A stretch of 64,000 nucleotides of DNA from Octopus bimaculoides (taxonomy: Eukaryota). The number at the start of each line of letters is the position of its first letter. Position 1 is the first letter of the stretch. The notes below the pieces were generated by a model that made no database searches, was not told the origin of the DNA, and saw only the letters and a program-made list of their open reading frames with translations. Location of the stretch: contig NC_068990.1 in NCBI RefSeq assembly GCF_001194135.2, positions 24,957,959 to 25,021,958 of the forward strand, read 5' to 3'. Of this stretch, positions 1 through 34,700 are shown one piece after another. The translations under genes were made by a program, and so were the position numbers.

Positions 1-38
<38 letters not shown>
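1..38. repeat. (TA)n microsatellite
   Basis: Perfect dinucleotide run at the window start. Many other (TA)n, (CA)n and (AAT)n runs occur, e.g. 606-662, 13435-13540, 17320-17485, 19140-19200, 52540-52785. Confidence 0.99.
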
Positions 39-40
<2 letters not shown>

Positions 41-187
41 ACAGATAAAGCTGGTCTATGGAATTACCCTGGGTTTCACATTTATAAAGCGCTTATATAT
101 ATATGGTTGGATGGATGTATATATGTATGTACGTACGTATCTGTGTATGTAAAGTATATATTCCTATATGTTAGCCCATTGCAAAAG

Positions 188-366
188 TCAAAATCTTCTT
201 GACTCTGATGTTGTTTCCTCCAGTTTCTCTGCAACTCTCTTCAGCAAGTTGACTGCCTTCAATACCGCACATTCTATGGCTAGTTTAGGGTTCAACCCTT
301 CACAAGTTGCACTCAGTCCAGTCGCTTTCTCAGTAGCTGTAGCCGTACATTGGGCTGGCCAAACAA
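188..366 (-). CDS. Paralogous terminal exon 3b (VWPAQCTATATEKATGLSATCEGLNPKLAIECAVLKAVNLLKRVAEKLEETTSESRRF*)
   Basis: tttttactctcttcctag acceptor, phase 1; same C-x14-C-x10-C spacing as 5929-6092; 15 of 53 ungapped identities by hand; TGA at 188-190. Absent from the ORF track. Confidence 0.75.
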
Positions 367-622
367 CTAGGAAGAGAGTAAAAATGGTCAGGTCATTTCC
401 TTGCTAGTGTTCATGCTTTATAATTTAGCCAACATTCATGTATCGCTTGTTTTGGAGAGAGTGTTGGCATAGGAGAGTAATGTATGATGGGTGATGTGAA
501 TGTATGTGTATGTCCCTAAGTAATTTTAGATAAAAAGTCTGCTTCAGCGATTTGCATCTCACCCATGTAAGCATGGGAAAGAGGATATTAAAACAATGAT
601 ATATACACACACACGCACACAT

Positions 623-666
<44 letters not shown>

Positions 667-884
667 GGTGCGGTAGGTAAATTGTCACCATTTTATATTT
701 TTAATTTCGCACATGCACATTGTTTGCTTTTGATTTTGTTAACTGCACAGTATAGTTGGGTCAGTTAGGCACTGTCTGTGAGAAAAACAGCACCATGATG
801 CAATTTACTCTGCCAAAAATTTGGAAACAACATGCTGTACTGCTTGGCATTCATGCCAGAAGCTCCAATACAAACAGAGGGTAA

Positions 885-1228
885 ACATACACAGAACAAC
901 AGGTGGCTTGCCATGCTTCCAAAATGTGTACCAAGAGTGATAAAAATCAAACATCTAGTCAACATCATGGTGTTTAGTGTGATCACTAGTGGTGGGGACA
1001 TTATGCCTCCATTCATCTTTCCACACAGCCTCAGCCTTAACATAGAGGTCTACATCAAGTGCCTGGACAAGGTAGTGCTGCCTTGGGTCAAGAAGGTGGC
1101 TGCTGGAAGACCCTATGTCTGGCAACAGGACTCTGCACCATGCCACACAAGCAGGAGAACCCAGTCATGGCTGTCAAACAATTTCTGTAACCACATCACT
1201 CCAAACATCTAGCCACCTAACTCCCCAC
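885..1228 (+). mobile_element. Tc1/mariner maT (DD37D)-type transposase fragment, interrupted by an RTE tail
   Basis: HTQNNRWLA..IMVFSVITSGGDIMPPFIF..VWQQDSAPCHTS..NI*PPNSP; same family as 54745-55300. Confidence 0.85.
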
Positions 1229-1401
1229 ACTCTTGGAGTGGTTGGCGTTAGGAAGGGCATCCAGCTGTAGAAACTCTGCCAGATCAGATTGGAGCCTGGT
1301 GCAGCCTTCTGGCTTGCCAGTCCTCAGTCAAATCGTCCAACCCATGCTAGCATGGAAAGCGGACGTTAAACGATGATGATGATAATGATGATGATGATGA
1401 T
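1228..1401 (+). mobile_element. RTE-type LINE 3' tail with (GAT)n end
   Basis: Same sequence that directly follows the RTE RT ORF at 55680-56660. Further copies at about 17100-17220(-), 18770-19135(+), 19810-19990(-), 26575-27022(+), 42420-42560(+), 46900-47150(+), 55350-55570(+). Confidence 0.8.
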
Positions 1402-1407
1402 GTATAT

Positions 1408-2500
1408 ATCAACAGGTTTGCCTTGGGAACTAGGATGGGCCGCAATTATGCAAACCTCTTTGTAGCCTGCATTGAAAAGCAAATCTTCACCCAATTCACA
1501 AAACCCATTACAGAGCTTACAGTCATTACTTTGGCAGCTGTATCAGCACTACCACCCTCACTAGACAACAGCTTGAGAGTTTTATTTTGTTGATTAACTC
1601 TTTTCGTCCTAACTTGGAATTTCCCTCTACTGTATCCAATTCTTCTGTTAGTATTCTAAAAACCTCCATCGCTATAAACAATATTTACTTGTCTACCTCC
1701 ATCCTCTGCAAGTCTATTAACTCCCACTCTTGTCTCCACTACTCTTCTTCTTACCCCAAACACTCTAAATCTGTCATACCATTCTCTCAATTCCTGTGCT
1801 CTATCTGGCTCTGCAGTATTGATTTGGATTTTGAATCTCAATGTAAAAGAATGTGACCTTTCTTACTGAATTAAATGTATCCTCAATCAATTGTTAGTCC
1901 TGCACAACCACACTACTGCTTTCTTATCCTAGTTAAGTACACCATTAGATTTTATTCCATACTCTCTAATCTTTTATCCATTTGCCTTCTGTTGAAAGAT
2001 AAACTCTTCCACAACTTCCAAATTCTACTTACTGAACCCAAACCACTTCAATCCTTCCTGTACCATCTCTCCTTGCCTTCAAAAAGGATTAGAATCTCAG
2101 AAACCTCCTTAGAAGCTCCACAGCACCCTGGCCCTCACAACCAGGCACTTTTAACGACACCGCTAATGCAAAACCTGCCCTTATATTAGCAATGCTACAA
2201 CCATCACTGGGCCTGAGTCATAATATCACATTACTCAGAATTTCTGTTGTACATTGTATGATCTTATATGTCGTACCATATGCAAACTATGCAGCACTCT
2301 GGGAAAACATGCAGACAACTTGCCAACCTCTTTCAGAAGCACATGTTATGTATGCCAGGTCAACTAGTCACCATCTACTTCAATACAACAGGCCATTCCA
2401 TTTTTGCACACCATCAATCGACATACTCAAGGAAACAGTGGAAACAAACTTTCGTATTTGAACTTAGTACTACCACATTAACAAGTCTAAATGAATGTTT
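1408..2500 (+). mobile_element. Penelope-like retroelement fragment (RT C-terminus and decayed GIY-YIG region)
   Basis: ALGTRMGRNYANLFVACIEKQIF; LSTSILCKSINSHSCLHYSSSYPKHSKSVIPFSQF; KTVETNFVFELSTTTLTSLNECF; multiple frameshifts. Confidence 0.85.
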
Positions 2501-2869
2501 TCCCCTACACCTCCTCTTATTTTAGTAATTCCTTTCTTATCCATCAACTGCCTTCTCACTTCATTCCTGCTTATGTCTGCTTTTCCACCTCATTCCTTTC
2601 TTTTCCCTTCTATCTTGCTCCCCTAGTTTCTCTCTCCTATTATTTCTTGTCTATGTGTGAAGCCCCTGTGGTCCTGTGTTCCTTATCAGTTGCAGCCAAT
2701 TTTTTTAACTTAGAGGATGTAAAACTTATGAATTAAAAGCATCTCAGTAATGTAATCATTATGGCTCGCACATACATAGTGTCTGTTTTGTTTATTCACC
2801 GAATTTGCAGTGGGATCACATCCATAATGCCGAGTATCAAAGAGCACCTGAATGTCACCATTATATATA

Positions 2870-3060
2870 GGGAAGAAACGTTAGCCCATTGGGCGAAATG
2901 CTCAGAGGTATTTCGTCTGTCTTTACATTTTGAGTTCAAATTCTGCCTCTCACCCTTTCGGGGTCAATAAATTAAGTACCAGTTGCGTACTGGGGTCAAT
3001 CTAATCGACTGGGCCCCTCTCCCAAAATTTCGGGTCTTGTGCCTTGAGTAGAAAAGATTA
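2870..3060 (+). mobile_element. tRNA-derived SINE with central domain cctttcatcctttcggggtcgataaa.taagtaccag
   Basis: GAGTTCAAATT B-box and a shared central domain. Related copies at about 6410-6540(-), 7225-7420(+), 17490-17670(+), 17960-18170(+), 20750-21080(+), 29580-29790(-), 38690-38900(-), 42720-42895(-), 51200-52230(-), 53940-54060(+), 58180-58390(+). Confidence 0.8.
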
Positions 3061-3564
3061 TATATGTGATATGTTGAGTTACTTTCCTTTATTTGTAAGA
3101 GTACTTGTTACTTATTCAACTGATCATATTTCAATAAAGCAGTCATTGCCAATCATTTCAGCAGGAATGGCCACTTGATTAATAAGTCTCATGTAAAATT
3201 GCCTTTTATTTTTATCTATTTTATCTCTGTTGTTGTAACATGACTTAATGTGGTTCTCATTGACAACCATATAAGCTGAACCGGTAAGAGTTATCCATCT
3301 TGGTCTAGGTTGGTGTCCTGTTCACAGAATGCAGTTGTTTGTCAACCTCAGTCACGCATCCACATTTAATTTTCCCTTTTTAGCCATAAATCATTCAAAA
3401 TAACAATACTATAACCAACTCTAAAAACCGGGCTTGCATTACTTCAAAAATCTATTCCTTTAATAAGCCACCAGAGGGAGCCTTACATCAATGGTTGTCA
3501 ATAAGGGTCCATTTCACTTTTCGGATTCACTTAAGATTTTGTTGTTTAAATTTATGTGCAATAA

Positions 3565-3897
3565 ATGGTTTAAGGAGCACTTCATCGGTTACGACGATGA
3601 GGGTCCCAGCTGGTACGATCAACGGAACAGCTTGCTTATAAAATTAACATGTAAGTGGTTGAGCATTCCACAGACACTTATAACCCTAACGTAGTTCTCA
3701 GGGAGATTCAGCCGTATACAGAGTGTGACAAAGCTGGTCCTTTGAGATACAGGTACTACTCATTTTTGCCAGCTGAGTAGACTGGAGCAACATGAAATAA
3801 AGTGTCTTGCTCAAGGACACAATGAGTTGCCAGGAATTGAACTCACAACCTTACAATTGTGAGTTGAATGCCCTAACCACTAAGCCACGCACCTTCG
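3565..3897 (-). mobile_element. tRNA-derived SINE (second family)
   Basis: tRNA-like head at the 3897 end; its ccagctgagt.gactggagcaac core is shared with 17685-17930(-) and its 3' tail with 12816-13190(+). Confidence 0.7.
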
Positions 3898-5928
3898 CAA
3901 TAAATGATTATAAGTCTACAAAACATTTAATATTTCAGTAATTTTTTTTTTATACAATTCCTAATAATATTTAATTATAAAGATATAATGGGACTTTTTC
4001 AAAACATTGAAAGACTATAGGGGTCCAGAAGAACAAAATAGGAATCAAAGGGATCCATAGATAAAAAAGGGTTGAGAACCTATGCTCTGCATTGTCTCTA
4101 GACCTGCTAGATATAGCAGCCAAATATTCTTCAAATCACACCATGTTGTCTTCATAAAAGGACACATTTGATGATATAGTCCAAGGTACATCATGCGTGT
4201 GTGTGTGTGTGTGTGTGTGGAACAGTTACATCTGGAATGTGGTTTGATCATAAGTTGATTGAATCTAAACAACAACAACAACAACAACAACAGTTGCCTT
4301 AACAACTCTGTGACTCTGTATAACTCTATAGCAGAAGACACCAAACTTTTTCATGGCAGGCCAGATATCTAAAAGAATGACATTCATGGGCCACATAACC
4401 ACTTTGTTCACTACAATACAGTGAATACACAAAAAATAAAGACAACCAACATATTCATTTACCAGAAAGTTATCAAAGAAGGCNNNNNNNNNNNNNNNNN
4501 NNNNNNNNNNNNNNNNNNNNNNNNNNNNNNNNNNNNNNNNNNNNNNNNNNNNNNNNNNNNNNNNNNNNNNNNNNNNNNNNNNNNNNNNNNNNNNNNNNNN
4601 NNNNNNNNNNNNNNNNNNNNNNNNNNNNNNNNNNNNNNNNNNNNNNNNNNNNNNNNNNNNNNNNNNNNNNNNNNNNNNNNNNNNNNNNNNNNNNNNNNNN
4701 NNNNNNNNNNNNNNNNNNNNNNNNNNNNNNNNNNNNNNNNNNNNNNNNNNNNNNNNNNNNNNNNNNNNNNNNNNNNNNNNNNNNNNNNNNNNNNNNNNNN
4801 NNNNNNNNNNNNNNNNNNNNNNNNNNNNNNNNNNNNNNNNNNNNNNNNNNNNNNNNNNNNNNNNNNNNNNNNNNNNNNNNNNNNNNNNNNNNNNNNNNNN
4901 NNNNNNNNNNNNNNNNNNNNNNNNNNNNNNNNNNNNNNNNNNNNNNNNNNNNNNNNNNNNNNNNNNNNNNNNNNNNNNNNNNNNNNNNNNNNNNNNNNNN
5001 NNNNNNNNNNNNNNNNNNNNNNNNNNNNNNNNNNNNNNNNNNNNNNNNNNNNNNNNNNNNNNNNNNNNNNNNNNNNNNNNNNNNNNNNNNNNNNNNNNNN
5101 NNNNNNNNNNNNNNNNNNNNNNNNNNNNNNNNNNNNNNNNNNNNNNNNNNNNNNNNNNNNNNNNNNNNNNNNNNNNNNNNNNNNNNNNNNNNNNNNNNNN
5201 NNNNNNNNNNNNNNNNNNNNNNNNNNNNNNNNNNNNTTGGTGACCCCTACTCTATAGCAATAAACTAGATGAGAGAAAAATCTAACACTGCTGGATAAAA
5301 GAGCATTCTGTGACTTTCCTAGAAAACTGGTTTTTACAGGTAAAACTAGGTTAATACAGATTTAATTGTCTCACCTACAATATATATATATATTTGAAAA
5401 CCCTACAAGAATAGGTGCAAGCGCTAATATTTATAAAACATGTGACATATTAATAAAAATCTGTAAATGTACAACCATCCAGATATCTGAGTACCTTATT
5501 ATTTTTTCTAATATATATATTTATCTCTGTGTGTGTTTGTGTTTTGATAACTGGTGTTGGTTTGTTTACATCCCTGTAGCTTAGTAGTTTGGCAAAAGAG
5601 ACTGATAGAATAAGTACCAGGTTTTAAAAAATAGTTTTGGGGTCAATTCATTCAACTAAAATTCTTCAAGGCAGTGCCTCAGAATGGCCACATTCTAATG
5701 ACTGAAACACGTAAACGATAAAAGGTAAGCAATCCTACAACTGCTCTTTTTTAGAGTTCAAAATTATTTGTTGATTTTCTAATAGTAATCCTATTTTCCA
5801 CTGTCTCACACTGTCCCCTTTCTTTCTGACTAACCCCTAATACTGTAAGAATCAAGAACCACCAACTTGAATTCGTAAATTACAATGAAAAATGAAAAAC
5901 AAACAAGTTTCTTAGAAGTCAAAGTGTT

Positions 5929-6092
5929 TTAGTTTTCTTTGTTTTTAAGTGTTATAGACAAAAGTCTGATTAGATTCATGACTTCTTCCATGGCACATGA
6001 GATGGCTTCCTTCTGGGTCCCCTTTGTGCAGGTGCTGGTAAGCTTGCTCTCATTCTCGGTGACAACCGCCTTGCACTTAAATAGATCAGGCA
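5929..6092 (-). CDS. Uncharacterised secreted protein, terminal exon 3a (PDLFKCKAVVTENESKLTSTCTKGTQKEAISCAMEEVMNLIRLLSITLKNKEN*)
   Basis: Strong polypyrimidine acceptor (ttctttttatcctctatctctccag), phase 1, open to TAA; supported by the paralogous exon at 188-366. Confidence 0.8.
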
Positions 6093-6603
6093 CTGGAGAG
6101 ATAGAGGATAAAAAGAAATGGCAACAATAAGCAGTGATTCTATTCATCAGACAATAAGGGTGGGACATATCTAGTCTCAAGTGGCCCACTCCTCAAATAA
6201 GGTTGTCCATCCCTGCTTTAGACAGTAGACTAGCACCTTATTAACTAATCCAGCTGCCACCATCATGGGTTAGAGCATTAACACATCGATAATCTGATCT
6301 GAAAAGGTGTAATTTATGAAAGAAAAGAAAGAGTCAAACATTGAACTAAGTGGCCATGCAACGTACACTACCTTGAAAGGTACAGTCGACTATATTGACC
6401 CCTACCAATTGTAGACTGCCCCTTATTTCTATGACCTCAAATAAATGAAAGGCAAAGTTAACCTAGCTGGAATTTGAACACAGAATGTAATGGGATGTAG
6501 CTAAATAGCATAAATTATTTTTGTCCAATAATTTACCAATTCCACTACCCACTGCTACCTTATTTTAAGATTTACTCTTCCTTCTTTTGTATCTATTATT
6601 ATT

Positions 6604-7140
6604 GCTATTGACTAGTTTCACTTTTATTGTGGTTCTCTGCAGTACACTTGAGTACAGCTTTGTGTGCCTTGGCTTTGTGCAGTGCATTGTTTGGTTTTGT
6701 TGGCTCTCTTGTATTCAGTAGTGCTATCTTCAGTATGCTGTATATATTTGTAAGTCCTAGCGTTTTTGGTTATGTATTAGTCTGCATGTTTTTCTTTGTT
6801 TATCAGTTCCAAACCACCTCTTATTATTATTAGGATTGTTACTCTTTTTTCATTTCTCTGAGTGATATATTATCATCTGTTGAGATTGGTACATTGATTA
6901 GGAGTCAATTCTTACCCAGTTTTCTTTGATAGCAATATCTGATGAATTATCATTAACCTCTCTGTCTGTGTATATTGGCATATTTCAGAGTATGGTTACT
7001 TTGTAATTCTTTAAAACCTTTTCTGGTGTATACCTACACCACCTCTGTCCTGTTGGTATTCATATTACTAGCACAACTTCCACTGGATATAAGCTTCTAA
7101 CTCTTTCATGTCTCTAGAAATATTCTTTATTGGCTAAAAC
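6604..7140 (-). mobile_element. R4/Dong-like non-LTR retrotransposon 3' fragment (restriction-like endonuclease)
   Basis: Decayed YEHQ..ENYK.ILW..IHTDR..PDIVIK..LLINVPISTDDNISLREMKK and KHADKYITKTLGLTNIYSILKIALL pieces in shifting frames. Confidence 0.6.
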
Positions 7141-12593: not shown

Positions 12594-12669
12594 ACAAGAA
12601 ACGTTTCCCAATGATGTGGCATCGGTCAGCAACAAAATGAAGAACAAAACTGGTCTCTGGAACAGGTAT
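12594..12669 (-). CDS. Uncharacterised secreted protein, exon 2 (IPVPETSFVLHFVADRCHIIGKRFL+T)
   Basis: T-rich tag acceptor and gtaagt donor; 76 nt, phase 0 to 1, which exactly bridges exon 1 and exon 3. Confidence 0.72.
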
Positions 12670-12815
12670 CTAGTATGAAATACAATAATACATTGATTTT
12701 ACTATTTAAAAAACACATTCTACTATTATATCCAATATCCAAAATAAACATCATTAAAAGAATATTTAACAACAATTTTTCATTCCTTGATCAATCCTTA
12801 CATAAAATACCAAGT

Positions 12816-13190
12816 GGAGGCGCAATGGCCCAGTGGCTAGGGCAGCAGACTTGCAGTTGTGGGATCATGGTTTCGATTCCCAGACTGGGCGTTGTGAGCG
12901 TTTATTGAGTGAAAACACCCAAAACTCCACGAGGCTCAGGCAGGGGATGGTGGTGAACCCTGCTGTACTCTTTCACCACAACTTTCTCTCATTCTTTCTT
13001 TCTGTTTCTGTTGTACCTGTATTTCAAAGAGCCAGTCTTGTCACACTCTCTGTCACTCTGAATCTCCCCAAGAACTCTATTAAGGGTACACATTTCTGTG
13101 GAGTGCTCAGCCACTTACATGTTAATTTCACGAGCAGGCTGTCCTGTTGGTCGGATCAACTGGAACCTTCGTCATCAGAGTGCCGCATCA
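12816..13190 (+). mobile_element. tRNA-derived SINE
   Basis: GGCGCAATGGCCCAGTGGCTAGGGC A-box and GGTTTCGATTCCC B-box head; tail shared with 3565-3700. Confidence 0.75.
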
Positions 13191-13276
13191 AAATTAACAA
13201 ATTATATAACCCCTACCCCCATGAATACCATTATAATAATAAGAAACAGTAAAAATTTATACATTTATAGGCACAG

Positions 13277-14120: not shown

Positions 14121-14351
14121 ATCGCCTTCGCTTCCTTTGAAGAACGACACCAAATGTTCAATGTGGGTTCTCAGGAAACCAATCTGTGTATCCAAAAGTG
14201 GTACTGTGACTTTTTTCAGCAACTCAATTGTTTTGCCACTGAGGCCAGCAATGATTCCAGCCAGGTCTGGTAGACCATGGGTGTTTTCTACCACCAAGCA
14301 ACTAGTCAGGAGGAAAATCACTGCAAAAACAGAAAAATAATATAACACCAT
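14121..14351 (-). CDS. Uncharacterised secreted protein, exon 1 of 3 (signal peptide MVLYYFSVFAVIFLLTSCLVVENTHG, then LPDLAGIIAGLSGKTIELLKKVTVPLLDTQIGFLRTHIEHLVSFFKGSEGD)
   Basis: AAAAATG start, hydrophobic core with THG|L cleavage-like site, 77 codons, perfect gtaagt donor in phase 0, TATAAAA about 80 nt upstream. Confidence 0.8.
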
Positions 14352-15850: not shown

Positions 15851-16910
15851 AACTTCATTATAAGTTTTATTCATTTGTTACTTATTTATGCCCTACCCTG
15901 AAGTAACCCAGGCCCCACCGGGGAGAAGTGTGCACCCCACCACCTTGCAAAACCTTCATCTAAGCCTTTGCCTTCTGTATTCACTCTCCCAACAATTGAA
16001 GTCAAATAAAGAGGGGTCTGTTTGAGGTCTTGTTGATTTAAAGAGAAATGAGGCAAAGTCACAAATTACTGATGAATTGAGGGAGCCTCTACATGGTTAC
16101 TTGACCTTATAGAAATAGCAGCAAGATGACTTTGAAATCACATCCCATTGTCTTAAAAAAGAAGTAGACATATAGTAAAAATGTAATCCAAGATATGTCT
16201 GAATAAATACAGGAATGGTCTTGGCTGAAATGTCTCTCAACCAATGTCTGCTTGATCAGGGCTAAATGGAAAGTGGAGGACAAACACCCATAATTCCTTT
16301 TAGGGTCCTTTTTGTGACAGGTGGACACTTTCCCTCAGTCCCTCAGGTAAGACAGTATGGTTTAGAGTACTTGCAAAATAATTGGAGTCTACCCAAGATA
16401 CTGAAGGGCCAGGCTGGGAGTTAAACAACAACATGGCAACAACAACAACAACAACAAAAAAAAAACTACTTACAGAATAACTTCATTCTGCTAGTTCAGA
16501 TGTCCTGGGTCAGAATATCTTCGCAAGAGAAAACCCACAGCTATTTATCTTTTTGGTTGCCAACCCCAAAACATCAGCGAATTTTCTCAAATGCTCTGAT
16601 GACACATCTCTTGATACTACAAGGTAGGCATTTTTTGTTATTTTTTCTTTTTTATTTTCTTTTATATTTTATTCATTTTTTTACTTTGTCGGTTTGTTTA
16701 TTTCATTCTTTGTTTTTCCTCCTTCCAGTTTCTTTTTTTTTTTTTATCTTTGATGTGAAATTCTACAACTGTTATGACTTCAAATGACCCAAATACAATT
16801 TTATCTTGTTATTCCAGTTCTGTTTTTAATCATCATAACAAATATTCATTAATTAGATATTCATAAAATCTTAAAAAATAATTAAAGAGATAACAAGACA
16901 ACAGTAATAT

Positions 16911-17363: not shown

Positions 17364-19147
17364 CAAACACACACACAGCAGGCACATGCATGCATGTGCA
17401 CACACACACAAGACAGCACACACATGCATGCACACACACACACGCATGCACACACACGCACACACATGCACACACACACACACATGTACTTCAATATTTT
17501 GCTAAAGTATCGTCTGTCTTTATGTTCTGAGTTCAAATTCTGCCGAGATTGACTTTGCCTTTCATCCTTTCGGGGTCGATAAATTAAGTACCAGTTGCAC
17601 ACTGGGGTTGATCTAATCGACTGGCTCCCTCCCCCAAAATTTCAGGCCTTGTGCCTAGAGTAAAATAAGTAAATAAATAAATGCGCCCTTTTAAAGCTTA
17701 GCCAGGCTCATGGGCCCAGTTTCTCGGTTTCCATGACGTATGTGTTCCCCAGCTGGACGTGACGCCAGTCCATCGCAGCGTTATTCATTTTTGCCAGCTG
17801 AGTGGAACTGGAGCAACGTGAAATGAAGTGTTTTGCTCAAGAACACAACGCATTGCCTGGTCCAGGAATCGAAACCACAATCTTACGATCATGATGCTGA
17901 CACTCTAACCACTAAGCCATGTGCCTCCACTGTGTGCCTAGAGTAGAAAAGAATATTTTGCTAAAGCATTGAGCTGGCAGAATCATTAGCATGCTGAAAA
18001 AAATGCTTAGTAATATTTTTTCTGTCTTTACATTGTCCGTCTTTACATCCCGAGTTCAACTTTGCCTTTCATCCTTTCGAAGTTGATAAAATAAGTACCA
18101 GTCATGTACTGGGGTCAATGTACACCTTCCCCTGAAATTGCTGGCCTTGTGTCAAAATTTGAAACCAATATTTTGCTAAGACATAGCAATACTAATGACC
18201 TAGTGTTAGAATTCAGTATAAATCTGTTTCAGAATATAGCACTAGTCAAGTACTGAGTGTAATATGAGATTAAATAAATGAGAATGGAACAGGAAATTAT
18301 TTAAGGAACTTCATTGGCTTACAGCTGTTTCTGCTATCAGATGTGGTGCACTCAGAGGTGAGTGCTTGTGTATCCTCAGAACTAATAAAGTTCATTGCAT
18401 AATTTCCTGTTATCTTGTCATATTAGTGACCTGTAAATCATGGGTTGGGTGGGTGCTGATGAAGAAGCAAAAACTCTTGAAATATGGCATATACACCCAT
18501 TTACCCATGTTTCATCTGTGATCTCATTGTTGTTTACATGAAACGTCTTGACTATGAAACATCGTAGCAAAATCAGGGCTGGCTATAATTCCTATAGAGA
18601 ATCTGTAGAGATAACAAGTTAGTTATATGTATGTGATGGGATTCTTTCAGTTTCCACCTACCAAATCCATTCACAAGACTTCAGTTGGTCCAAGGCTATA
18701 GTAGAGAATACTTACCCATACTGTGAGACTGAACCCAGAATCATGCTTGAGAAGACCTGTTGAGTCAAGTAAAACTAATATCATAGCTGTGGCCAGTGCC
18801 CCCTGACTGGCTTCTCATGCCAGTGGCACATAAAAAGCTTCAATGAATCATGGCCGATGCCAGTAACCCTTGACTGGCTCTTGTGCCAGTGGCACATAAA
18901 AAGCACCATCCAAATGTGATTGATGCCAGACCTGCCAGACTAGTTCCTGCCAGTGGCACGTAAAAAGTACTCACTACACTCTCGGAGTAGCTGGCGTTAG
19001 GAAAGGCATCCAGCTGTAGAAATATTGCCAGATCAGATTGGAGCCTGGTGTAGCCTTCTGGCTTCCCAGATCCCCAGTCGAACCGTCCAACCTATGCCAG
19101 CATGGAAAACGGATGTTAAACAATGATGATGATGATATATATATATT

Positions 19148-26258: not shown

Positions 26259-28866
26259 CTGCAAAAGAGAAAATTTTAATTCACATTTAATAATTCCTTC
26301 AGAATATTTTATTCATTTCTATTGAATGAAAGGACTAATTACAGAAAGTAAAGAATCTTTCTAAAAATAAATCAAAAGGAAATAATTTGGAGATTGAAGA
26401 TTAGNNNNNNNNNNNNNNNNNNNNNNNNNNNNNNNNNNNNNNNNNNNNNNNNNNNNNNNNNNNNNNNNNNNNNNNNNNNNNNNNNNNNNNNNNNNNNNNN
26501 NNNNNNNNNNNNNTACATATTTTACTTGACTAACATATTTATTAAGCAGAATCTCAATCAAATCAAAATCAAAATGGAAATTGTAGTTGTGGCCGATGCC
26601 AATGCCACTTGACTGGCTCCTGTACTGGTAGCATGCAATAAGCACCATTCATGTGTGGGTCATTGCCAGTACCACCCGACTGGCTCCCTGTGCCAGTGGC
26701 ATGTAAAAAGCACCATCTGAATGTGGTCGATGCCAGTTCGCCCGCCCCCCACTGGCTCCTGTGCCGGTAGCACATAAAAAGCACCATTTGAACGTGGTTG
26801 ATGCCATTGCCACCCGACTGGCTTCCATGCCAGTGGCACATAAAAATCACCCACTACACTCTCAGAGTGGTTGGCATTAGGAAGGGCATCCAGGTGTAGA
26901 AACACTGCTAGATCAGATTGGAGCCTGGTGCAGCTTCCTGGCTTGCTTGCCAGTCCCCAGTCAAACCATCCAACCCATGCCAGCATGGAAAACGGACGCT
27001 AAATGATGATGATGATGATGATGTATTGTAGCAGAAACAGGAGATAGAAGAATGTGACTTGAGGGAACATTGGCTACTATATCTGACTAATATATAGAGG
27101 TGTCACTTGACAGTACATGCATACATATAAACATATATAAGACAGTACGGGGATATTTCTAACAGGTGTAACTGCAATGTATCTCATTGGTATGTGTGTA
27201 CGTATGTACGCACGCACGCATGCACGCACACACACACACACAACAATAGAAATAGTACTATGTGACTTGAGAGTGATTTAGCAATTTTTTCTAGCAGGTT
27301 GTGCTACCACAAAGACATCTATCTTGGCTCACATAGACATATGATACAACATTACATACATACATATATATATATATCATCATCATCATTGTTTAACGTC
27401 CGCTTTCCATGCTAGCATGGGCTGGATGATTTGACTGAGGACAACAAAAAATGAAACAAGAACATAACAGGTGACAACAAAATAGCCAGACAGTTAGACG
27501 ATACAAAAAAGGACAGGATAAAACAAGGATGAGTCATTTAGAGCTTTCTATCCTCAGTCGAGTTCCAGATTATCTCAGCAGTTTCAGTCGGTTACACTCG
27601 AGACTGCTCCAATCTGGCCGGCCCCAAGAAAATCTAAGCTAAGAGCACTAGATTCCTTGGAAGAAAACAAGCAAATGTATACGAAAACAAGGATGGAAAA
27701 AACAGAGAAATGGTACACAATTATAAATACAAACAACAGGACATTAACAACAGGTGTCTTTCAACTAAGGATGAATTAAATTAAGCTGGTATGTGTGGAA
27801 GTGAAGTCTTACGGCAGGGACATAGGAGATGAAAGTCATATATATATATATGTATATATATCTTTTAGCTTTTACTTGTTTCACTCATTAGGCTGTGGTG
27901 ATGCTGGAGCACAGCCATGGACCATGTGGTAAGAAGTTTGATTTCAGGTTCAGTCCTACTGCAAGGCACCTTGGGCAGACCAAAGCTTTGCGAGTAAATT
28001 TAGTCGATGGAAACTGAAAGAAGCCCATCACATATACATTGTTGCCGTGTATTATATAAGAATGGATGTGAGTATATTCTTATATAATGCAGGGCAACCA
28101 TGTATTACTTGTGTAGTAAAACCTGTCCCTCTACCATACTTTGACCTTATAACAACTGTCAGAAAGCCACCTCCATCTCTACTACACCCCCAGCGCAGTC
28201 AAAGGAGTATTTTCTTTGTCTTGCAAGGGACTGGTGACCTCACTAGTTACCAGTTTCATCAAAAAAGCACCAGTACACACTATAAAGTGGCTGGTGTTAA
28301 GAAAAGCATCCAGCCATAGAAACCATGCCAAAGCAGACATTGGAACTCAACACAGGTCCTCTGGCTTGTTGGAGCATGTTGTAATTCATTGCCAATATGG
28401 AAGGAGTATGTTAAATGATGATGATAATCTTCCATAGAGAGGAAGAGTGAGAGAAGAAAAATTAAAGAGAGATTGAAGGAGGAAGAAAAAAAGTTTGATG
28501 TTACACAAACATATTTTAGAATCATTAACTCACCCCGCCACTCACTGCAACTTTCTCTGCATCAATTTGTTACCTATACTGCTTCAACTTTCTATTTTAC
28601 TTTTCGTACAGCAGGGTGTGGTTTGAAGGGGATTTGACTGTTATTTCTCAAAATAAATGCTAGGACTTGTTTTGTAGTTCTGAATCCAAGGAAGACATGT
28701 AATCACTTGGAAAATTTTGTCAAAAATACATTGACCTCCAGTGCTTATTCATAAGTCTAGTACTTATTCTATTCTCTTTTATTTAACCACTAATTTATGG
28801 GACATAAACAACCAACAATGGTTGTAAAGCATTGAGCAAATACAAATACACACGCACACACACACA

Positions 28867-28910
<44 letters not shown>

Positions 28911-29310
28911 TCTACACAGTGTCTGTCAACCAAATTCACTCAAGGTATTGGTTAGCCCAGGGCTATAGAAGAAGAGACTCGCCCAAGGTGTCACATAGTG
29001 GAACTGAACCTGAAACCACATGATTACAAAGTGAGTTTCTTAACCACACAATCATGCCTGTGCCAATGAGATAAAGAAATTTTAAAACATTTAAATTTTC
29101 ATTACACTTTCAACTGAAACAGAAAGGGACGTATTTGTCACCTGATTTTTTAAATATATTTGATGTATTTCTTAACATTTTCAAATGGTTTTTCACATGT
29201 ATTATCAAGCAATTAAAACATCCACATTTGAACAGTATTTAATTTGAGTATTTCAAATATAAAGTCGATTTGAGTAGAAATATATTTCTCAATAATAAAA
29301 GTGAACTTAC

Positions 29311-29373
29311 CACAAATCCCACAGCCAGCAGAGCATGAAACAACAGTATCAAAAACATAGCACCCCAGGCAAT
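29311..29373 (-). CDS. YIPF1: YIPF1 exon 8 (IAWGAMFLILLFHALLAVGFV)
   Basis: Last TM helix with the conserved H-x-LL-x-VG pattern; cag acceptor and gtaagt donor; 63 nt. Confidence 0.95.
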
Positions 29374-30477
29374 CTGTGAATTAGAAACAACTCTTTAATC
29401 AGCAATCAAATTTTATATTAACACATTTATAACATGTACAATCAATTATTGTTCAGAGAACAAAATACGTAAGGTTTCTATTCAGAGTGTGTGTGTACGC
29501 GTGCGTGCTTGTGATGAGAGGGAGAGAGTTAGTTAATGAAGGTTGGAAGTTCAAAATATTAATTTTATGTCTAATTAATATGGGTTTGAAATTTTGGCAC
29601 AAGGCTACCAATTTCAGGGGAGGGAGTAAGTTAATTACACCAACCCCAGTATTCAACTGGTACATATCCATGAAGGGATAAAAGGGAAAGTCAACCTCAG
29701 TGGAATTTGAACTCAAAATGCAAAGACAGACGAAATGTCACTCGGTATTTTGCCCAGCATGGTAACGATTCTGCCAGCTCACCACCTTATGTTAAGTTAA
29801 TATTAACGAACATTTAGACATTAAAAAACATATGTTAATTCATCATCATCATCGTTTTAACGTCCACTGTTCCATGTTCACATCGGTTAGCTAGAATTTG
29901 TTGACGCAGATTTTCCTATGTCTGGATGCCTTTCTTGTAGTCAACCTATCACCTTCCCACTCTGTCCTCCCCAGCATTTTACTTAATGACTTTTGACACA
30001 AATCTCTTCCCTTCTCTCTGTTCCCTGCCATACTCCCTCTCCCAGTTAGTGTCCACCCTCCACTACCTCCCTGTTGTAATTATAAATCTGTTCCTGTCAT
30101 CTTTACTCTCCCTTACCACCCTGCTTAAAATCCTCACACATTCTCATTCTCTCTTGCCTCAGTTATAGGAGCCACTTTAAGCCCTTAATTTTGCAAGCTA
30201 CCAGTATGTTATCATTAGTGCTGGTGTCTCAAAAAAAGCACTGAGTGCACTCTGCAAAGTGGTTAGTATTACGAAGGGCATCTAACCATAGAAACCATGC
30301 CAAAGCAGACATTGGAACATGATACAGTCTTGTGACTTGTCAGATCCTATTGAACCATCCAACTCAGGGCAGTAAGGAAGACAGCTGTTAAATGATGATG
30401 GTGATGATGATAAATGTATGAGTTTTATAAATCCATTAAAAGGTTTACAAAATTTAATCAGCAAATGCATAGTTTAC

Positions 30478-30597
30478 CTTTTTCTCATCTTCTCTAACAG
30501 CAGGCCAGAAAGTAAAGAGTAACACCCCTCCAGACAGGGAAGCACCAATGATTACCAATAACCACTGAAACCAGTTTATTTGTACAACCCAAAGTAT
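30478..30597 (-). CDS. YIPF1: YIPF1 exon 7 (ILWVVQINWFQWLLVIIGASLSGGVLLFTFWPAVREDEKK)
   Basis: TFWPAVRED matches YIPF1; 120 nt, phase 0 to 0; tttttccag acceptor and gtaaac donor. Confidence 0.96.
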
Positions 30598-31201
30598 CTG
30601 GAAAAAAAAAAAAACTCAATAAATTAAAGTACATAATTATAATAAAAGAAATACAAAAGCAATTTGGAATCAGGAAAATCAATTCCTACACTCTTATAAC
30701 CTCTAACCACCCACACTTCCTGTTCTCTCGTTCGCATCCACTTCTATTCACCTTGTACTTTGAAGGCCCATCCTGACACTTCATTACCACAACAATTTTT
30801 ATATCTTTCAAGTTTCATCTTAGCCACTTCCATCCTCTCTTCTATAATGCGAGCAGCTCTGTAGCTCCTCTATAGCAAGAAGTCTCTTCTGTCCCACTTT
30901 AAACCCCTCATCCCATAACATAAAGCCACCTCTTGCTCTCTCTCTCTCTCTCTTTCCCTCTACTGTAGCTCTACTCAGTTGCATGGCGACCTCACTAGAG
31001 CTGGTGCCATGAAAAAAGCACCCAGTATAGAAGGGTATCCAGCCATAGAATCTATGTCAAAGCAGACATTGGAATATTATGCAGTCTTCAGACATGTTGG
31101 ATCCTGTCAAAGCATCATATTATCATTCAGCAAGGATAACTGTATGCACCAAAATGCAAATAAAACTATTTCTATTGCAATGGTTGCTACTGCTCATTTA
31201 A

Positions 31202-31420
31202 CCCTTTTGCATTTAAACCAGCCATATCCAGCCCAAGTATTCTACTTGTTTTATTTTCAAACTGGCCAGATCCAGCCTATCAGATCTAACTTTCAATGCC
31301 ATTATAAAATATACAACCACATCATCATAATTTCGAAGCTACAAAATAATGCATGATTAATTAACAGCAATGTTAATGAAGAAGTATGACATTTGATAGA
31401 ATAATCTGAGTGCTAAAGGG
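31202..31420. mobile_element. piggyBac-type MITE
   Basis: TTAA|CCCTTTTGCA ... TGCTAAAGGG|TTAA with perfect TTAA duplication. Confidence 0.85.
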
Positions 31421-31424
31421 TTAA

Positions 31425-31629
31425 TGACCCACCTGAAACCACTTCTGGTTCTATAATGCAATCTCCCTGTTTTAAAGTGATCTGCATTGAACTTCCATTA
31501 AAGTTTTACGTTAATTTGTTCCAAATATCAGCTTAATGATGACAGTTGTTTTATTAAATTCTTCATTATTTTCAAAATTAAATAAAACAAGAGACCGTGT
31601 ATTTCAACAGAAATATAGTGACAAGAGGG
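31425..31629. mobile_element. piggyBac-type MITE lacking its left TIR
   Basis: Ends AGAGGG|TTAA; internal sequence like 31717-31936, 14900-15110 and 42900-43010. Confidence 0.6.
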
Positions 31630-31716
31630 TTAATTGAGTTGTAGACATAACAACAGCTATAAGTTAAACATATCTACAAATTTCTGCATGGTCATGAGAA
31701 ACCACATGCTACTTCA

Positions 31717-31936
31717 CCCTTTTGTTACCAACCCAGCTGAAACTGGCTCTGGTTCTGAGTACAAATGTCTTGTTTTCATAAATTTTGAATTAAAATCTTC
31801 CACCAAATCTTGGTCACAATTTATGTTCCTAACACTAGCTGAATGATAAATAAGTTATTTTACTAAATTCTTTGTTATATTTAAAGTAATTGAAAGAAAC
31901 ACAAAGCATCTCAGAAAAAATACAGTAATGAAAGGG
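31717..31936. mobile_element. piggyBac-type MITE
   Basis: TTCA|CCCTTTTGTTAC ... GTAATGAAAGGG|TTAA. Confidence 0.75.
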
Positions 31937-32064
31937 TTAAAGGTAGAGAAGACCATTGGTACTACTTTAAGAATGGTACTAAAAAAGAAGAAAAGATGTC
32001 ATAATAAAACTAATACATTTTGAGATAAGTGGTCTGTTTGTAACAGGAAGTTTATGTCACTTAC

Positions 32065-32219
32065 AGAAATAGGTATGTAAATAGCCAACGAATATCCATA
32101 AACACTGATCATTTCCAGGAAACTGTAGCCAGCACTACTTCCTCTCCACCATAATAATCCAAATAACATTGTTGGGATTATCCACCAATAACTAAATATT
32201 GCAGTTGCAGCAAAAGTCA
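32065..32219 (-). CDS. YIPF1: YIPF1 exon 6 (TFAATAIFSYWWIIPTMLFGLLWWRGSSAGYSFLEMISVYGYSLAIYIPIS)
   Basis: YSFLE..VYGYSL.IYIP motif of the Yip1 domain; atttcag acceptor and gtaagt donor. Confidence 0.97.
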
Positions 32220-32942
32220 CTGAAATAAGGAATAAAAAGAAACGTTACTTTCTTCTGCACTTCTCATGTTAATATTTTCTTATTGTGTTTTCAAAGCATT
32301 TCTTTTTGTAGTTAATTCAAATGAATCTATTATAAATAGCAATTCTGGACATGGGGAGGATCTGAACTAAGAAATATAGGATATAAAATTAGATAATAAG
32401 ACTATAAAGCAATTAAGTTCTGTTCTTTATACCATTACACAAAGTAGTGGTGGCCAATTTTGTAGGAGACAAGTCAACTTTACCTTTCTCTGTTTGAAAG
32501 CACAAACAACAAACTAGATTTCATAAAACATTTAACTTAAAAGTTGTTTGAATTTCTGAAGGTCAGCAGTTGAGAGTAAAATATAAGCAGAGAAAAGTGG
32601 GAAGAACAGATTTTTAAAGGGAGAGAGAGAGAGTGAGTTCTAGTGATGGGGGTGATTAGATAAAGATTTTAGGCAGAATGGGCCAGTAAGAGGAAATAGG
32701 ATTGAACCCAAAACCACACAGCCATGCTTGCCATTAATTTTATGTTTCCTCACTTTGAAACCTCAAGTAACAAATAACATGTTACAGCAAAAACATCTGA
32801 GTTTGCTAAGAAAGGGATAAAGGCAGCTCCATGGCTCAGGTTTCAAACCCATTACTGGCTGTGGAAGTCAAAGAAATATTAAAAAGTTCAGAATTTACTA
32901 AAAGACAATACTTAAAACTGAAAACAAATAATTATGAAATAC

Positions 32943-33056
32943 CTTTGTGGAAATCATATTGCCAATGGTAATTTTGTCCTTTCGATTGAAAATAATTAGC
33001 AAGATTACCAGCAATTGCAGTGGTGAATACTAAAGTTGTACATATCCAAAATGGAC
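32943..33056 (-). CDS. YIPF1: YIPF1 exon 5 (PFWICTTLVFTTAIAGNLANYFQSKGQNYHWQYDFHK)
   Basis: Completes the Yip1-domain DLYGPFWIC motif and TM1; phase 1 to 1; AG/GT boundaries. Not in the ORF track. Confidence 0.97.
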
Positions 33057-34700
33057 CTGGAAAGGTGAAGGAAAACATAACATATTACTCTCATAAATAA
33101 ACACATTAATTCCATTTTTGTGATTCAGTCAACACATAGCTAGGGCAAAGAATGTCCAGGATTTTGGTAAGACAGGTGTGGATTCGAGGATATTGTAAAT
33201 ACACCTTAATTTGAATAGAATTTTCTGCATCAAATTTCTAAAATATGTCACCAACTTTTAGGAAGTTCTCCCAGCTTTTGCAGCTGAGCCATATTACTTG
33301 ATAAAAATGTTTTTCTCTTCATAGATCTTACTGAAGTGAGTGAACTATTTGGGATGAGAAGCAGTGTTAGTGGTAAGGTGTATGTTGAGGTTTCTGTAGA
33401 CCTGTAATATATCATAAAACATAGATGCTTTCTAATGTGAAAGGGATTTTAAAAACCAATGCTTACCTCAGAGTTTATGGCATTAAGTATAGTGAGTAAT
33501 AAATCTCAGTCTAAATACGATGCAATCTGTCACAGGAAGCATTAACAAATGCTCTTGTATCAAATCATGACAGCTAACTGAACTGAGGCAATGTAGAATA
33601 ATATGTTCTGTTTAGAAACACTACAAAATGCCTGCAGTAGATTTGAACACCTGAGCTATAAGCAGGTAGTGCAATATTTAAAAAAATTACTGTAATGGAT
33701 GCTGGGAAGGGATATACTGGGATGCCTTCTGCATCAAAAATTAATAATAGCAAGTAGGCTCTAACACTGTGTGGTAAGCCCAAACAATTTTAATTTATTA
33801 GAAAGACATCCCAAGTAATGATTAAAAAAAATCATTATCATGAATGACTAATTCTATTTAAGAAGAGCAAGGGAGATAACTCCAGAATTAATCCTAATTC
33901 ACAGACAAATGTTACATGCTTCAGTCTTTTTAGGCCTCATTAATAATGCATTATCTACATATTACTACAAAGGATTAAACTGACATATCTATTTAGGCAT
34001 CTTGCTATTATTCTAATGATTATCAAGTTATGATTAAGAACACATTTGAATATGTAGTATCGATTATCTGCAAACAAAAGCATTATATCTATAACAATGT
34101 AATATTTACTTAATTTTGAATAAAACTAACATTCAAAACTGGTTTCAAATATTTAAATAAAAATATAAACAGACTCCAAATATTTGAAATCTTTTTGTAA
34201 ATTAGTGAATGGAAGAGGTCAGTCCTCATGATCTTTGTAGGCCCTTCTTATGCTATCATGTGGGACATCTGCAGTTTATTGTCTGTTAGAAAAACGCGAA
34301 CCAAGTGTGTGTGTCAAATGTTTGCAAACAGAGTGAATTCCATTAAATGTATCCAAAAGCCACATGGTGGTATTGCTATTAAATGTGGCTTAACCACAAC
34401 ATCTCACTCCAAAAAATGGGGAAAATACTCCTCTGTGGTATGTTATTTCAGCAGTAAAATAAGAGTGGTTGTTCTACTAGAAAAAGACAGGAATCTTAAA
34501 CAGAAATACATGTATGTCTGAATAAGCTTATGGTTCAGCAAACTTAGGATTGGTTAACAAGAAGAACAAGGGTGGAAATTGGTTGGGAATACTTTAAAAT
34601 TAACCATTTATTAGAAATATTAAAAAATAAATTTACTAATTAAAAGATTTGTTTAATAAAATACAAGAAATTGTAAAGAGGAAAAAACTTAATAACATAC

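What the first reader, a model, noticed from the sequence alone, without database searches (positions are those of the whole stretch)
188..366. Cryptic second terminal exon paralogous to the secreted protein's exon 3: tandem family or alternative last exons
Seen: a minus-strand exon with a strong acceptor, phase 1, encoding VWPAQC-TATATEKATGLSAT-C-EGLNPKLAIE-C-AVLKAVNLL. It aligns without gaps to exon 3a (PDLFKC-KAVVTENESKLTST-C-TKGTQKEAIS-C-AMEEVMNLI), with 15 of 53 identities including all three Cys, TE, L, AI, CA and NL. Conservation shows at the protein level while the DNA is strongly diverged, as expected for selected coding sequence. I found no matching exon 2 between 370 and 4480. Inference: either exon 2 (ending in phase 1) splices to 3a or 3b, giving one precursor with two swappable C-terminal modules, or this is a tandem paralogue whose 5' exons lie in the gap at 4484-5236.
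Basis: partly seen in the sequence, partly recalled or inferred. Interest (0 to 1): 0.72.

Follow-up and report, generated by a model that had tools for sequence, protein, structure and literature searches.

The report
Unannotated fourth alternative last exon
The stretch is a real coding exon conserved between Octopus and Argonauta: one of four tandemly duplicated, interchangeable last exons of an uncharacterised secreted octopus protein, and the only one that no genome annotation retrieved here uses.

Summary
Window 366..188 (minus strand) is an open frame behind a strong acceptor, in phase 1. It is homologous to the annotated last exon at 6092..5929: 15 of 53 identities, all three Cys, tblastn E 1.5e-5.

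The window is Octopus bimaculoides chromosome CM046610.1. The gene is LOC106883259, a member of an uncharacterised secreted protein family found here in chitons, gastropods and cephalopods.

Comparison with O. sinensis and Argonauta hians shows four paralogous terminal exons, not two. They lie in the same order in all three species (3a, 3b, 3c, 3d). RefSeq isoforms use 3a, 3c and 3d. Exon 3b, the finding, lies inside the intron of isoform X2 and is used by no protein retrieved here.

Evidence that 3b is a selected coding exon:
- The ORF is intact in all three species, and a 3b-type exon occurs in a fourth, unidentified one.
- Its acceptor TTTACTCTCTTCCTAG is identical in all three, while the flanks cannot be aligned between Octopus and Argonauta.
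- Nonsynonymous change is far below synonymous change (Fisher p 1.7e-8).

No second copy of the 5' exons exists, so the tandem-gene reading is rejected. Transcript use of 3b was not testable, and recent relaxation within Octopus is not excluded. This is a new member of a known kind: C-terminal variants derived from tandem exon duplication.

The parts
188..366 (-). Terminal coding exon 3b, the finding. Phase 1, reading F-VWPAQC...SRRF, with the stop TGA at 190..188. It is the second of four paralogous alternative last exons and is not in any annotated protein retrieved here.
   Evidence: Orthologues lie at L003 33516-33692 and L002 18765-18938.
367..382 (-). Polypyrimidine tract and AG acceptor of exon 3b (TTTACTCTCTTCCTAG). 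It is identical in O. bimaculoides, O. sinensis and A. hians.
   Evidence: Alignment between Octopus and Argonauta starts exactly here; the upstream flank cannot be aligned.
5929..6092 (-). Terminal coding exon 3a (L-PDLFKC...KNKEN, stop at 5931..5929). It is used by annotated isoform X1 (XP_014789683.1).
12594..12669 (-). Constitutive exon 3 (IPVPETSFVLHFVADRCHIIGKRFL + T). Its donor GTAAGT starts at 12593 and it ends in phase 1. It is the shared donor for all four terminal exons and carries Cys88 and the invariant G-K-R motif.
14121..14320 (-). Constitutive exon 2 (..IFLLTSCLVVENTHG LPDLAGII...KGSEGD). It ends in phase 0. An in-frame ATG at 14351 upstream of its acceptor gives the alternative N-terminus MVLYYFSVFAV.
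   Evidence: The O. vulgaris model P0006 uses the MVLYYF start.
16474..16486 (-). Coding part of exon 1 (ATG AAG TTA TTC T = MKLF, phase 1). The donor GTAAGT starts at 16473.
   Evidence: It matches the annotated N-terminus MKLFL. The gene start in L001 (10001) maps to window 16486.

Best explanation
Window 366..188 (minus strand) is exon '3b' of Octopus bimaculoides LOC106883259. It is the second of four tandemly duplicated, mutually exclusive last coding exons.

Proposed mechanism:
- The gene has three constant coding exons. Exon 1 encodes MKLF. Exon 2 encodes the rest of the signal peptide, a long helix and the first predicted strand; exon 3 continues the strands and carries Cys88 and the G-K-R motif.
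- The phase-1 donor at 12594 joins to the acceptor of one of four terminal exons, in the order 3a, 3b, 3c, 3d.
- Each terminal exon brings its own stop codon and 3' end.
- Each terminal exon encodes the second half of one small alpha/beta domain: a beta-hairpin (C-x14-C) followed by a C-terminal helix that starts with A-I-x-C-A.
- The choice of last exon therefore keeps the disulfide-bonded core and replaces the hairpin-helix loop and the helix residues that vary between the modules.
- Use of 3b would give a 155-residue precursor reading ...GKRFL-F-VWPAQC...SRRF.

Shown here: the homology, the position inside the gene, the matching phase, the conserved acceptor, the conserved ORF, purifying selection between Octopus and Argonauta, and annotated use of the three sister exons.

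Inferred: that 3b is spliced in living octopus, probably in a tissue or stage not sampled for annotation. The functional consequence of changing the module is also inferred.
For: (1) Identity of the locus. The window is 100% identical to GCA_001194135.2 CM046610.1. The three-exon model matches XP_014789683.1 at 99% identity.

(2) Four modules in the same order in three species:
- O. bimaculoides L001: 20394, 26123, 30629, 33839.
- O. sinensis L003: 22581, 33516, 38004, 42128.
- A. hians L002: 15561, 18765, 20949, 21611.
A profile HMM finds exactly four in the gap-free loci and no degenerate extras.

(3) Isoforms X1, X2 and X3 use 3a, 3c and 3d. Alternative last-exon choice is therefore already annotated for this gene, and 3b lies inside the X2 intron.

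(4) The 3b sequences form their own clade: 88% amino-acid identity between O. bimaculoides and O. sinensis, and 68-72% between Octopus and Argonauta. A 3b-type exon (NWPATC...) with an acceptor and an AATAAA 10 nt after the stop occurs in genomic contigs of a fourth species.

(5) Selection on 3b between Octopus and Argonauta: pN 0.24 against pS 0.74, with differences by codon position of 19/13/30 and Fisher p = 1.7e-8. This is comparable to the annotated exons 3a and 3c.

(6) Conservation between Octopus and Argonauta starts at the polypyrimidine tract and ends near the stop. The flanks cannot be aligned. Only the proposed frame is open in all three species.

(7) The AlphaFold model built from a 12-sequence alignment has block-mean pLDDT of 79-90 over residues 101-150. 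It places the module's two strands (101-109, 115-120) and its helix (123-149) after strands 68-73 and 80-85 of the constant exons.
Against: - No transcript or protein evidence for 3b. None of the annotated proteins retrieved for O. bimaculoides, O. sinensis, O. vulgaris or A. hians contains it. Two word-index searches with the peptide found nothing, though that search is insensitive for such short queries.
- Within the genus Octopus, constraint is not demonstrable. O. bimaculoides versus O. sinensis gives dN/dS 0.40 (Fisher p 0.11). The exon has 8.0% mismatches against about 8.7% in the surrounding intron.
- Octopus 3b has no canonical AATAAA or ATTAAA within about 900 nt of the stop in O. sinensis. 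In O. bimaculoides only 187 nt are readable before a gap. Argonauta and the fourth species have AATAAA 1-10 nt after the stop. Annotated 3a also lacks a nearby signal, so this point is weak.
- The acceptor is TAG followed by T, slightly weaker than the CAG of the three sister exons.
Confidence: 0.78

Rival explanations
1. Exon 3b was a functional alternative last exon in the octopod ancestor but is now a silent or decaying relic in the genus Octopus. It would no longer be spliced or polyadenylated efficiently, and its intact frame would only reflect too little time to decay.
For: - It is the only one of the four modules without an annotated isoform in either RefSeq-annotated Octopus species.
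- O. bimaculoides versus O. sinensis gives dN/dS 0.40, not significantly below 1 (p 0.11). Exon divergence of 8.0% is about equal to intron mismatch of 8.7%.
- The AATAAA next to the stop in Argonauta and in the fourth species is absent in Octopus.
- By my polarisation of the peptide sequences, O. bimaculoides carries most of the derived replacements. One is K to T next to the first Cys.
Against: - The frame is open over 58 codons with the same stop in both Octopus species, and there are no indels. The surrounding 1.2 kb of intron alignment has 7 gap openings.
- The acceptor and polypyrimidine tract are fully intact.
- The test has little power, with only 14 substitutions.
- Annotated exon 3a also has no canonical signal within about 560-640 nt of its stop.
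Confidence: 0.17
2. Exon 3b is the last exon of a separate tandem paralogous gene whose own 5' exons are hidden in the assembly gap at 4484-5236.
For: In O. bimaculoides a 753-N gap lies between 3a and 3b, so the window alone cannot exclude this.
Against: - The gap-free O. sinensis and A. hians loci each contain a single copy of exon 2 and a single copy of exon 3, both upstream of 3a. Neither has any copy between 3a and 3b.
- The annotated isoform X2 splices across 3b to 3c.
- All four modules share the phase of the single exon-3 donor.
Confidence: 0.03
3. The resemblance is a chance open frame or a fragment of a transposon protein.
For: The exon lies among microsatellites, and an ORF that looks like a Tc1/mariner transposase fragment lies at 832-1212 on the other strand.
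Against: - None of 100,000 shuffles reached the observed score, and the within-window E-value is 1.5e-5.
- There is no Pfam hit.
- It is single-copy, with positional orthologues in three species.
- In the library of 1.84 billion proteins, the family profile matched only family members. The one hit confined to the module region is a 3b-type exon.
Confidence: 0.02

Closest known systems
Tandem exon duplication-derived C-terminal substitutions. These are homologous alternative last exons chosen through alternative 3' end use, for example the FBLN1/fbl-1 C-terminal duplication, as reviewed in PMC8373072.
   Same: Homologous exons are duplicated in tandem at the 3' end of one gene. They share one upstream donor, and each has its own stop, so the isoforms have homologous but different C-termini. 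PMC8373072 states that such 3' CDS duplications generate homologous C-terminals via alternative poly(A) use, and that genes with three or more such C-terminals exist.
   Different: Here there are four modules in a small secreted protein of unknown function that was found only in molluscs. One of the four has no annotated isoform. Poly(A) site use was not observed.
Arrays of alternative 3' terminal exons in insect BTB-zinc-finger genes (lola, broad, fruitless, mod(mdg4)). Cited from general knowledge, not tested here.
   Same: Constant N-terminal exons are joined to one of several paralogous terminal exons. Each terminal exon encodes a variant of the same small Cys-containing module.
   Different: Those are nuclear transcription factors with zinc-finger modules, and some use trans-splicing. 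There is no sequence relationship. Here the product is secreted, and the module completes a single folded domain rather than forming an independent one.
Alternative splicing of crustacean hyperglycaemic hormone / ion transport peptide (CHH versus CHH-L, ITP versus ITPL). Cited from general knowledge.
   Same: A secreted, disulfide-bonded protein keeps its N-terminal half, while alternative exons that preserve the Cys framework supply a homologous C-terminal half.
   Different: There is no homology: the Pfam scans returned no significant family for either isoform model. Here there are four alternatives rather than two, with 4 Cys rather than 6.
Octopus paralogue LOC106874926 / LOC115215373 and the family members in gastropods and a chiton.
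   Same: They share the same family: signal peptide, invariant G70, C88, K93-R94, C103, C118, C129-A130. In the octopus paralogue the terminal exon likewise begins just after the G(R)KR motif.
   Different: The paralogue has a single terminal exon. The chiton protein is a polyprotein of three tandem whole units. The four-exon array was seen only in the octopod LOC106883259 orthologues.

Membership tests
Tandem-duplicated alternative last exons (homologous C-terminal substitution) | Homologous exons adjacent in tandem, on the same strand and within one gene | tested here: met
   Four modules lie in the same order in three species. Exon 3b lies between annotated 3a and 3c, inside the CDS span of the gene.
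Tandem-duplicated alternative last exons (homologous C-terminal substitution) | The same splice phase as the shared upstream donor, and a usable acceptor | tested here: met
   Exon 3 ends in phase 1. All four modules start with two bases of a codon behind a pyrimidine tract and AG. The 3b acceptor is identical in three species.
Tandem-duplicated alternative last exons (homologous C-terminal substitution) | Each exon carries its own stop codon and 3' end signal | tested here: inconclusive
   A stop codon is present at a conserved position in all copies. For 3b, a canonical poly(A) signal lies next to the stop in Argonauta and in the fourth species, but none lies within about 900 nt in O. sinensis.
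Tandem-duplicated alternative last exons (homologous C-terminal substitution) | Mutually exclusive use in transcripts | not testable with these tools
   Annotated isoforms show this for 3a, 3c and 3d. No transcript data could be reached for 3b.
Mollusc secreted protein family of LOC106883259 (unnamed) | The conserved residues of the C-terminal module: C103, V/A107, E109, C118, A126, C129-A130 at fixed spacing | tested here: met
   Exon 3b has C-x14-C-x10-C with T-E and A-I-x-C-A in register. It scores 85 bits (E 7e-25) against the module profile, although it was itself part of that profile. It matches the X2 module independently at E 5e-11.
Prohormone / neuropeptide-type precursor | Signal peptide plus conserved dibasic (and Gly-Lys-Arg) processing sites, with processed products detected | tested here: inconclusive
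   K-R is invariant, and the preceding Gly nearly so, two residues before the terminal-exon junction in every family member. KRQ follows the signal peptide in gastropods, and KPKRQ separates the units of the chiton polyprotein. Processing itself cannot be tested here. The model shows the two halves as one domain.
Transposon-encoded protein | Similarity to a transposase, reverse transcriptase or other mobile-element family, and multiple dispersed copies | tested here: not met
   There is no Pfam hit. The only other copy in the window is exon 3a. No repeat overlaps the exon.

The most novel reading that the evidence does not exclude
The gene may be a cassette-type precursor. The K-R (with a nearly invariant Gly before it) that sits two residues before the terminal-exon junction would be a convertase site. 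Each alternative last exon would then correspond almost exactly to one mature peptide of about 55 residues with three Cys. That peptide would be either released or held to the constant chain through Cys88. One octopod gene would then deliver four different signalling or defence peptides by last-exon choice, with 3b as a rarely expressed fourth ligand. The chiton polyprotein would be the tandem-unit solution to the same problem.
Probability: 0.15. Interest if true: 0.6.

Novelty: new member of a known kind. Interest (0 to 1): 0.35.

Why it matters
The immediate value is annotation. A conserved coding exon and a fourth protein isoform are missing from the protein sets retrieved here for O. bimaculoides, O. 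sinensis, O. vulgaris and A. hians. The O. bimaculoides assembly also hides part of module 3d in a gap.

Beyond that, the locus is a clean, small example of a four-way array of homologous alternative last exons that predates the split between Octopus and Argonauta. It lies in a secreted protein family that has no Pfam domain, no significant structural relative in the PDB, and no mention in the papers searched.

If the modules confer different binding specificities, or are released at the conserved K-R site, the gene would be a compact way of diversifying a secreted ligand. As it stands, this is an ordinary mechanism in an uncharacterised gene.

Tried and rejected
- A two-sequence profile of 3a and 3b, and the 3b peptide alone, against the 5.8-billion-protein word index both returned nothing. 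This reflects low sensitivity for 54-58-residue queries at that database size. The same database holds P0001, which contains exon 3a exactly.
- Pfam and PDB sequence searches of both isoform models gave only noise: L27_1 at E 0.03-0.12 and FtsH at E 0.9.
- Foldseek against the PDB gave no hit below E 0.1. It showed only a generic resemblance to small alpha/beta domains. The first structure model, from four sequences, was too poor to use (pLDDT 48).
The short TTG-started ORF within 3b is not on record.
- Isoforms P0002 and P0003 could not be located directly, because only the longest product of each gene is indexed.
- I considered a signal-peptide-like alternative frame of exon 3 (YLFQRPVLFFILLLTDATSLG). 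I rejected it because the annotated proteins use the IPVPETSF frame.
- Rfam finds nothing in 1-7000.
- Literature searches for the locus names, accessions, peptide strings and run accessions found nothing.
- A fifth cephalopod locus (L009) shows exon 3 and a 3a-type exon only. The 10 kb that could be fetched downstream is too short to say whether 3b-3d exist there.

Full report
**1. Observation**

On the minus strand, a pyrimidine-rich tract and AG (tttttactctcttcctag) end at 367. From 366, in phase 1, the frame reads F-VWPAQCTATATEKATGLSATCEGLNPKLAIECAVLKAVNLLKRVAEKLEETTSESRRF, with the stop TGA at 190..188. The coordinates 188-366 are exact.

In the ungapped register, 15 of 53 positions are identical, including all three Cys. 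None of 100,000 shuffles reached that count or the BLOSUM62 score of 59. In a six-frame tblastn of the whole window, each exon finds the other at E 1.5e-5, and the next hit has E 0.5. The flanking DNA shares nothing but dispersed repeats and microsatellites.

**2. The gene**

Three minus-strand pieces assemble into a 156-residue secreted-looking protein:
- an ATG-containing exon ending at 14121,
- exon 12669..12594,
- the exon at 6092.

This model has no Pfam family and no relative of solved structure by sequence. Searching it against the large protein collection identified it at 99% identity as 'uncharacterized protein LOC106883259 isoform X1' of Octopus bimaculoides. Further isoforms came from O. 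bimaculoides (X2), O. sinensis (LOC115215941 X2) and Argonauta hians.

The annotated N-terminus is MKLFL. It comes from a short true first exon in the window: ATG at 16486, donor after 16474.

The window is 100% identical to chromosome CM046610.1 of assembly GCA_001194135.2, with window coordinate = 26487 minus L001 coordinate.

**3. Four modules, not two**

Isoform X2 ends in a third paralogous sequence, FRSFMKCKATVTEKQ.... It is not in the readable window. It lies beyond window position 1, at L001 30629-30790, after a 2.5-kb assembly gap. A fourth copy starts inside another gap and continues at L001 33839-33931.

The gap-free O. sinensis locus (L003) has four modules at 22581, 33516, 38004 and 42128. 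The A. hians locus (L002) has four at 15561, 18765, 20949 and 21611, in the same order. A profile HMM built from all modules finds exactly four in each gap-free locus, two in the window, and no degenerate extras.

O. sinensis isoforms X1, X3 and X2 use modules 3a, 3c and 3d respectively. Alternative choice of last exon is therefore already annotated for this gene. Module 3b, the finding, is the only one used by no protein retrieved here. It lies inside the intron that isoform X2 splices across.

**4. Is 3b a real coding exon?**

The 3b sequences of the three species form their own clade: 88% amino-acid identity between O. bimaculoides and O. sinensis, and 68-72% between Octopus and Argonauta. 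The duplication therefore predates the split between Octopus and Argonauta.

The frame is open for 58, 58 and 57 codons, with the stop at the same place. It is the only frame open in all three species.

Between Octopus and Argonauta, the alignable DNA begins at the polypyrimidine tract. TTTACTCTCTTCCTAG|TT is identical in all three species. The alignable stretch ends near the stop, and both flanks are unrelated microsatellite-rich sequence.

| Comparison for 3b | Result |
|---|---|
| Differences by codon position, O. bimaculoides vs A. hians | 19 / 13 / 30 |
| pN vs pS, O. bimaculoides vs A. hians | 0.24 vs 0.74 |
| Fisher test, O. bimaculoides vs A. hians | p = 1.7e-8 |
| Fisher test, O. sinensis vs A. 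hians | p = 1.2e-7 |

These values are as strong as for the annotated exons 3a and 3c.

An exhaustive profile search of 1.84 billion representative proteins also returned a 59-residue ORF, P0019 (NWPATCKAYVTEVKTGLRTTC...TTTEHML). It comes from genomic contigs of four sequencing runs of an unidentified species. It is closest to the 3b type, with a BLOSUM62 score of 114-132 against at most 94 for the other types. It lies behind an acceptor (tttccctccag) and has AATAAA 10 nt after its stop.

**5. Caveats**

No transcript data could be reached, so use of the 366 acceptor is inferred. Within the genus Octopus, constraint cannot be shown:
- O. bimaculoides versus O. sinensis has 8 nonsynonymous and 6 synonymous differences (dN/dS 0.40, p 0.11).
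- The exon's 8.0% mismatch is about the same as the 8.7% of the surrounding intron alignment. That intron alignment has 7 gap openings, and the exon has none.
- Octopus 3b lacks a canonical poly(A) hexamer within about 900 nt in O. sinensis, whereas Argonauta has one overlapping the stop. Annotated 3a also has none within about 560-640 nt, so this point is weak.

A recently silenced relic in Octopus therefore remains a rival. I put it at roughly one in six.

**6.

The gap-free O. sinensis and A. hians loci hold a single copy of exon 2 and a single copy of exon 3, both upstream of 3a. That reading is rejected.

A transposon origin is also rejected. There is no Pfam hit, the exon is single-copy, and it has positional orthologues.

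**7. What the protein is**

The profile search shows a small family seen here only in molluscs, all members annotated as uncharacterised:
- a chiton polyprotein of three tandem units separated by KPKRQ (Liolophura sinensis),
- limpet, vent-snail and abalone proteins of 127-152 residues,
- a second octopus paralogue on the same chromosome.

Invariant positions are G70, C88, K93, R94, C103, V107, E109, C118, A126, C129 and A130. The octopus paralogue has the same intron just after G(R)KR but only one terminal exon. The four-exon array was seen only in the octopod LOC106883259 orthologues.

An AlphaFold model built from 12 family sequences has mean pLDDT 66.7, with block means of 79-90 over residues 101-150. 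It predicts strands at 68-73 and 80-85 from the constant exons. Strands 101-109 and 115-120 and helix 123-149 come from the terminal exon. A low-confidence loop around Cys88-GKRFL lies between them. Foldseek finds no PDB relative below E 0.1.

Each terminal exon therefore supplies the second half of one small alpha/beta domain and three of its four Cys. The residues conserved between modules are C-K-A-x-V-T-E, T-G-L-x-x-T-C and A-I-x-C-A. The loop after the second Cys and most of the helix and tail differ between modules.

**8. Mechanism**

The best-supported mechanism is ordinary alternative last-exon choice on a tandem-duplicated exon array. This is a known kind of event. The review PMC8373072 states that 3' CDS duplications generate homologous C-terminals via alternative poly(A) use, and that genes with three or more such C-terminals exist.

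A more speculative reading starts from the K-R that is invariant in every family member (with a nearly invariant Gly before it) and lies two residues before the junction. If it is a convertase site, each last exon would equal one mature Cys-containing peptide. The sequence features are suggestive. Against this, the model shows the two halves as a single domain, and nothing here tests cleavage.

**9. Verdict**

Direct use of the exon is unproven, and the tandem-gene alternative is rejected.

This is a new, unannotated member of a known kind of gene architecture in an uncharacterised mollusc secreted protein family. It is a useful annotation correction and a neat comparative example, but not a surprising mechanism.

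Noticed in passing
L001 33427-33931 (outside the window, downstream of window position 1): The fourth module, 3d, of O. bimaculoides is cut by a 412-N assembly gap. Only its last 30 codons (KHYQKEAIECAAKEVIDLLQALVKKVQSNA) are readable. This probably explains why O. bimaculoides has no isoform equivalent to O. sinensis X2.
   Followed up: partly
window 14321-14351 and 16474-16486, minus strand: There are two possible N-termini. The first is MKLF from a short first exon, as in the RefSeq isoforms. The second is MVLYYFSVFAV, from an in-frame ATG just upstream of the exon-2 acceptor, as in an O. vulgaris model (P0006). By eye, both look like signal peptides.
   Followed up: partly
window 12594-12610, minus strand (end of exon 3); family alignment A4: K-R is invariant in every family member from chiton to octopus, the preceding Gly is nearly so, and the motif lies two residues before the terminal-exon junction. 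Gastropod members have KRQ after the signal peptide. The chiton member is a three-unit polyprotein with KPKRQ linkers. This looks like prohormone-type processing but is untested.
   Followed up: partly
protein P0011 (MDK0675413.1, 283-bp contig): A protein labelled 'hypothetical protein, partial [Clostridium perfringens]' is a spliced fragment of a cephalopod-type member of this family, with exons 2 and 3 contiguous. It is presumably animal cDNA or DNA contamination in a bacterial assembly.
   Followed up: no
window 832-1212 (+), 48908-49240 (+), 54704-55048 (+), 56225-56656 (-): These ORFs look by eye like fragments of Tc1/mariner-type transposases (for example ...YVWQQDSAPCHTSRRTQSWL..., ...DNAHLHTV...PYVPDIAPSDHHLF...) and of a retroelement protein. 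None reached E 0.01 against Pfam.
   Followed up: partly
window 12830-13250, 3593-3759, 1220-1386, 18969-19136 and others: Dispersed repeat copies, 77-88% identical to one another, occur throughout the introns together with many (CA)n and (TA)n microsatellites. By eye, one of them (about 12830-12900) looks tRNA-like, as SINEs often are.
   Followed up: no
window about 26400-35000, minus strand; L001 1-339, L002 1-4634, L003 1-93: The upstream neighbour is conserved in all three species and carries a Yip1 domain (PF04893) in the precomputed annotation for O. sinensis and A. hians. A window ORF at 34636-34929 (YPFWKFDYYQQFFDVD...) may be one of its exons. This supports orthology of the loci.
   Followed up: no
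L009 11232-11306 and about 12770-12938 (ENA ERZ21867824, contig ctg114858l): Another cephalopod-like genome contig carries exon 2, exon 3 (IPVTDTPFNIHFVAERCHLLGKRIL) and a 3a-type terminal exon (…NLVKLVSITLKNKDKQNNNN). No further module lies in the 7 kb downstream that could be fetched.
   Followed up: partly
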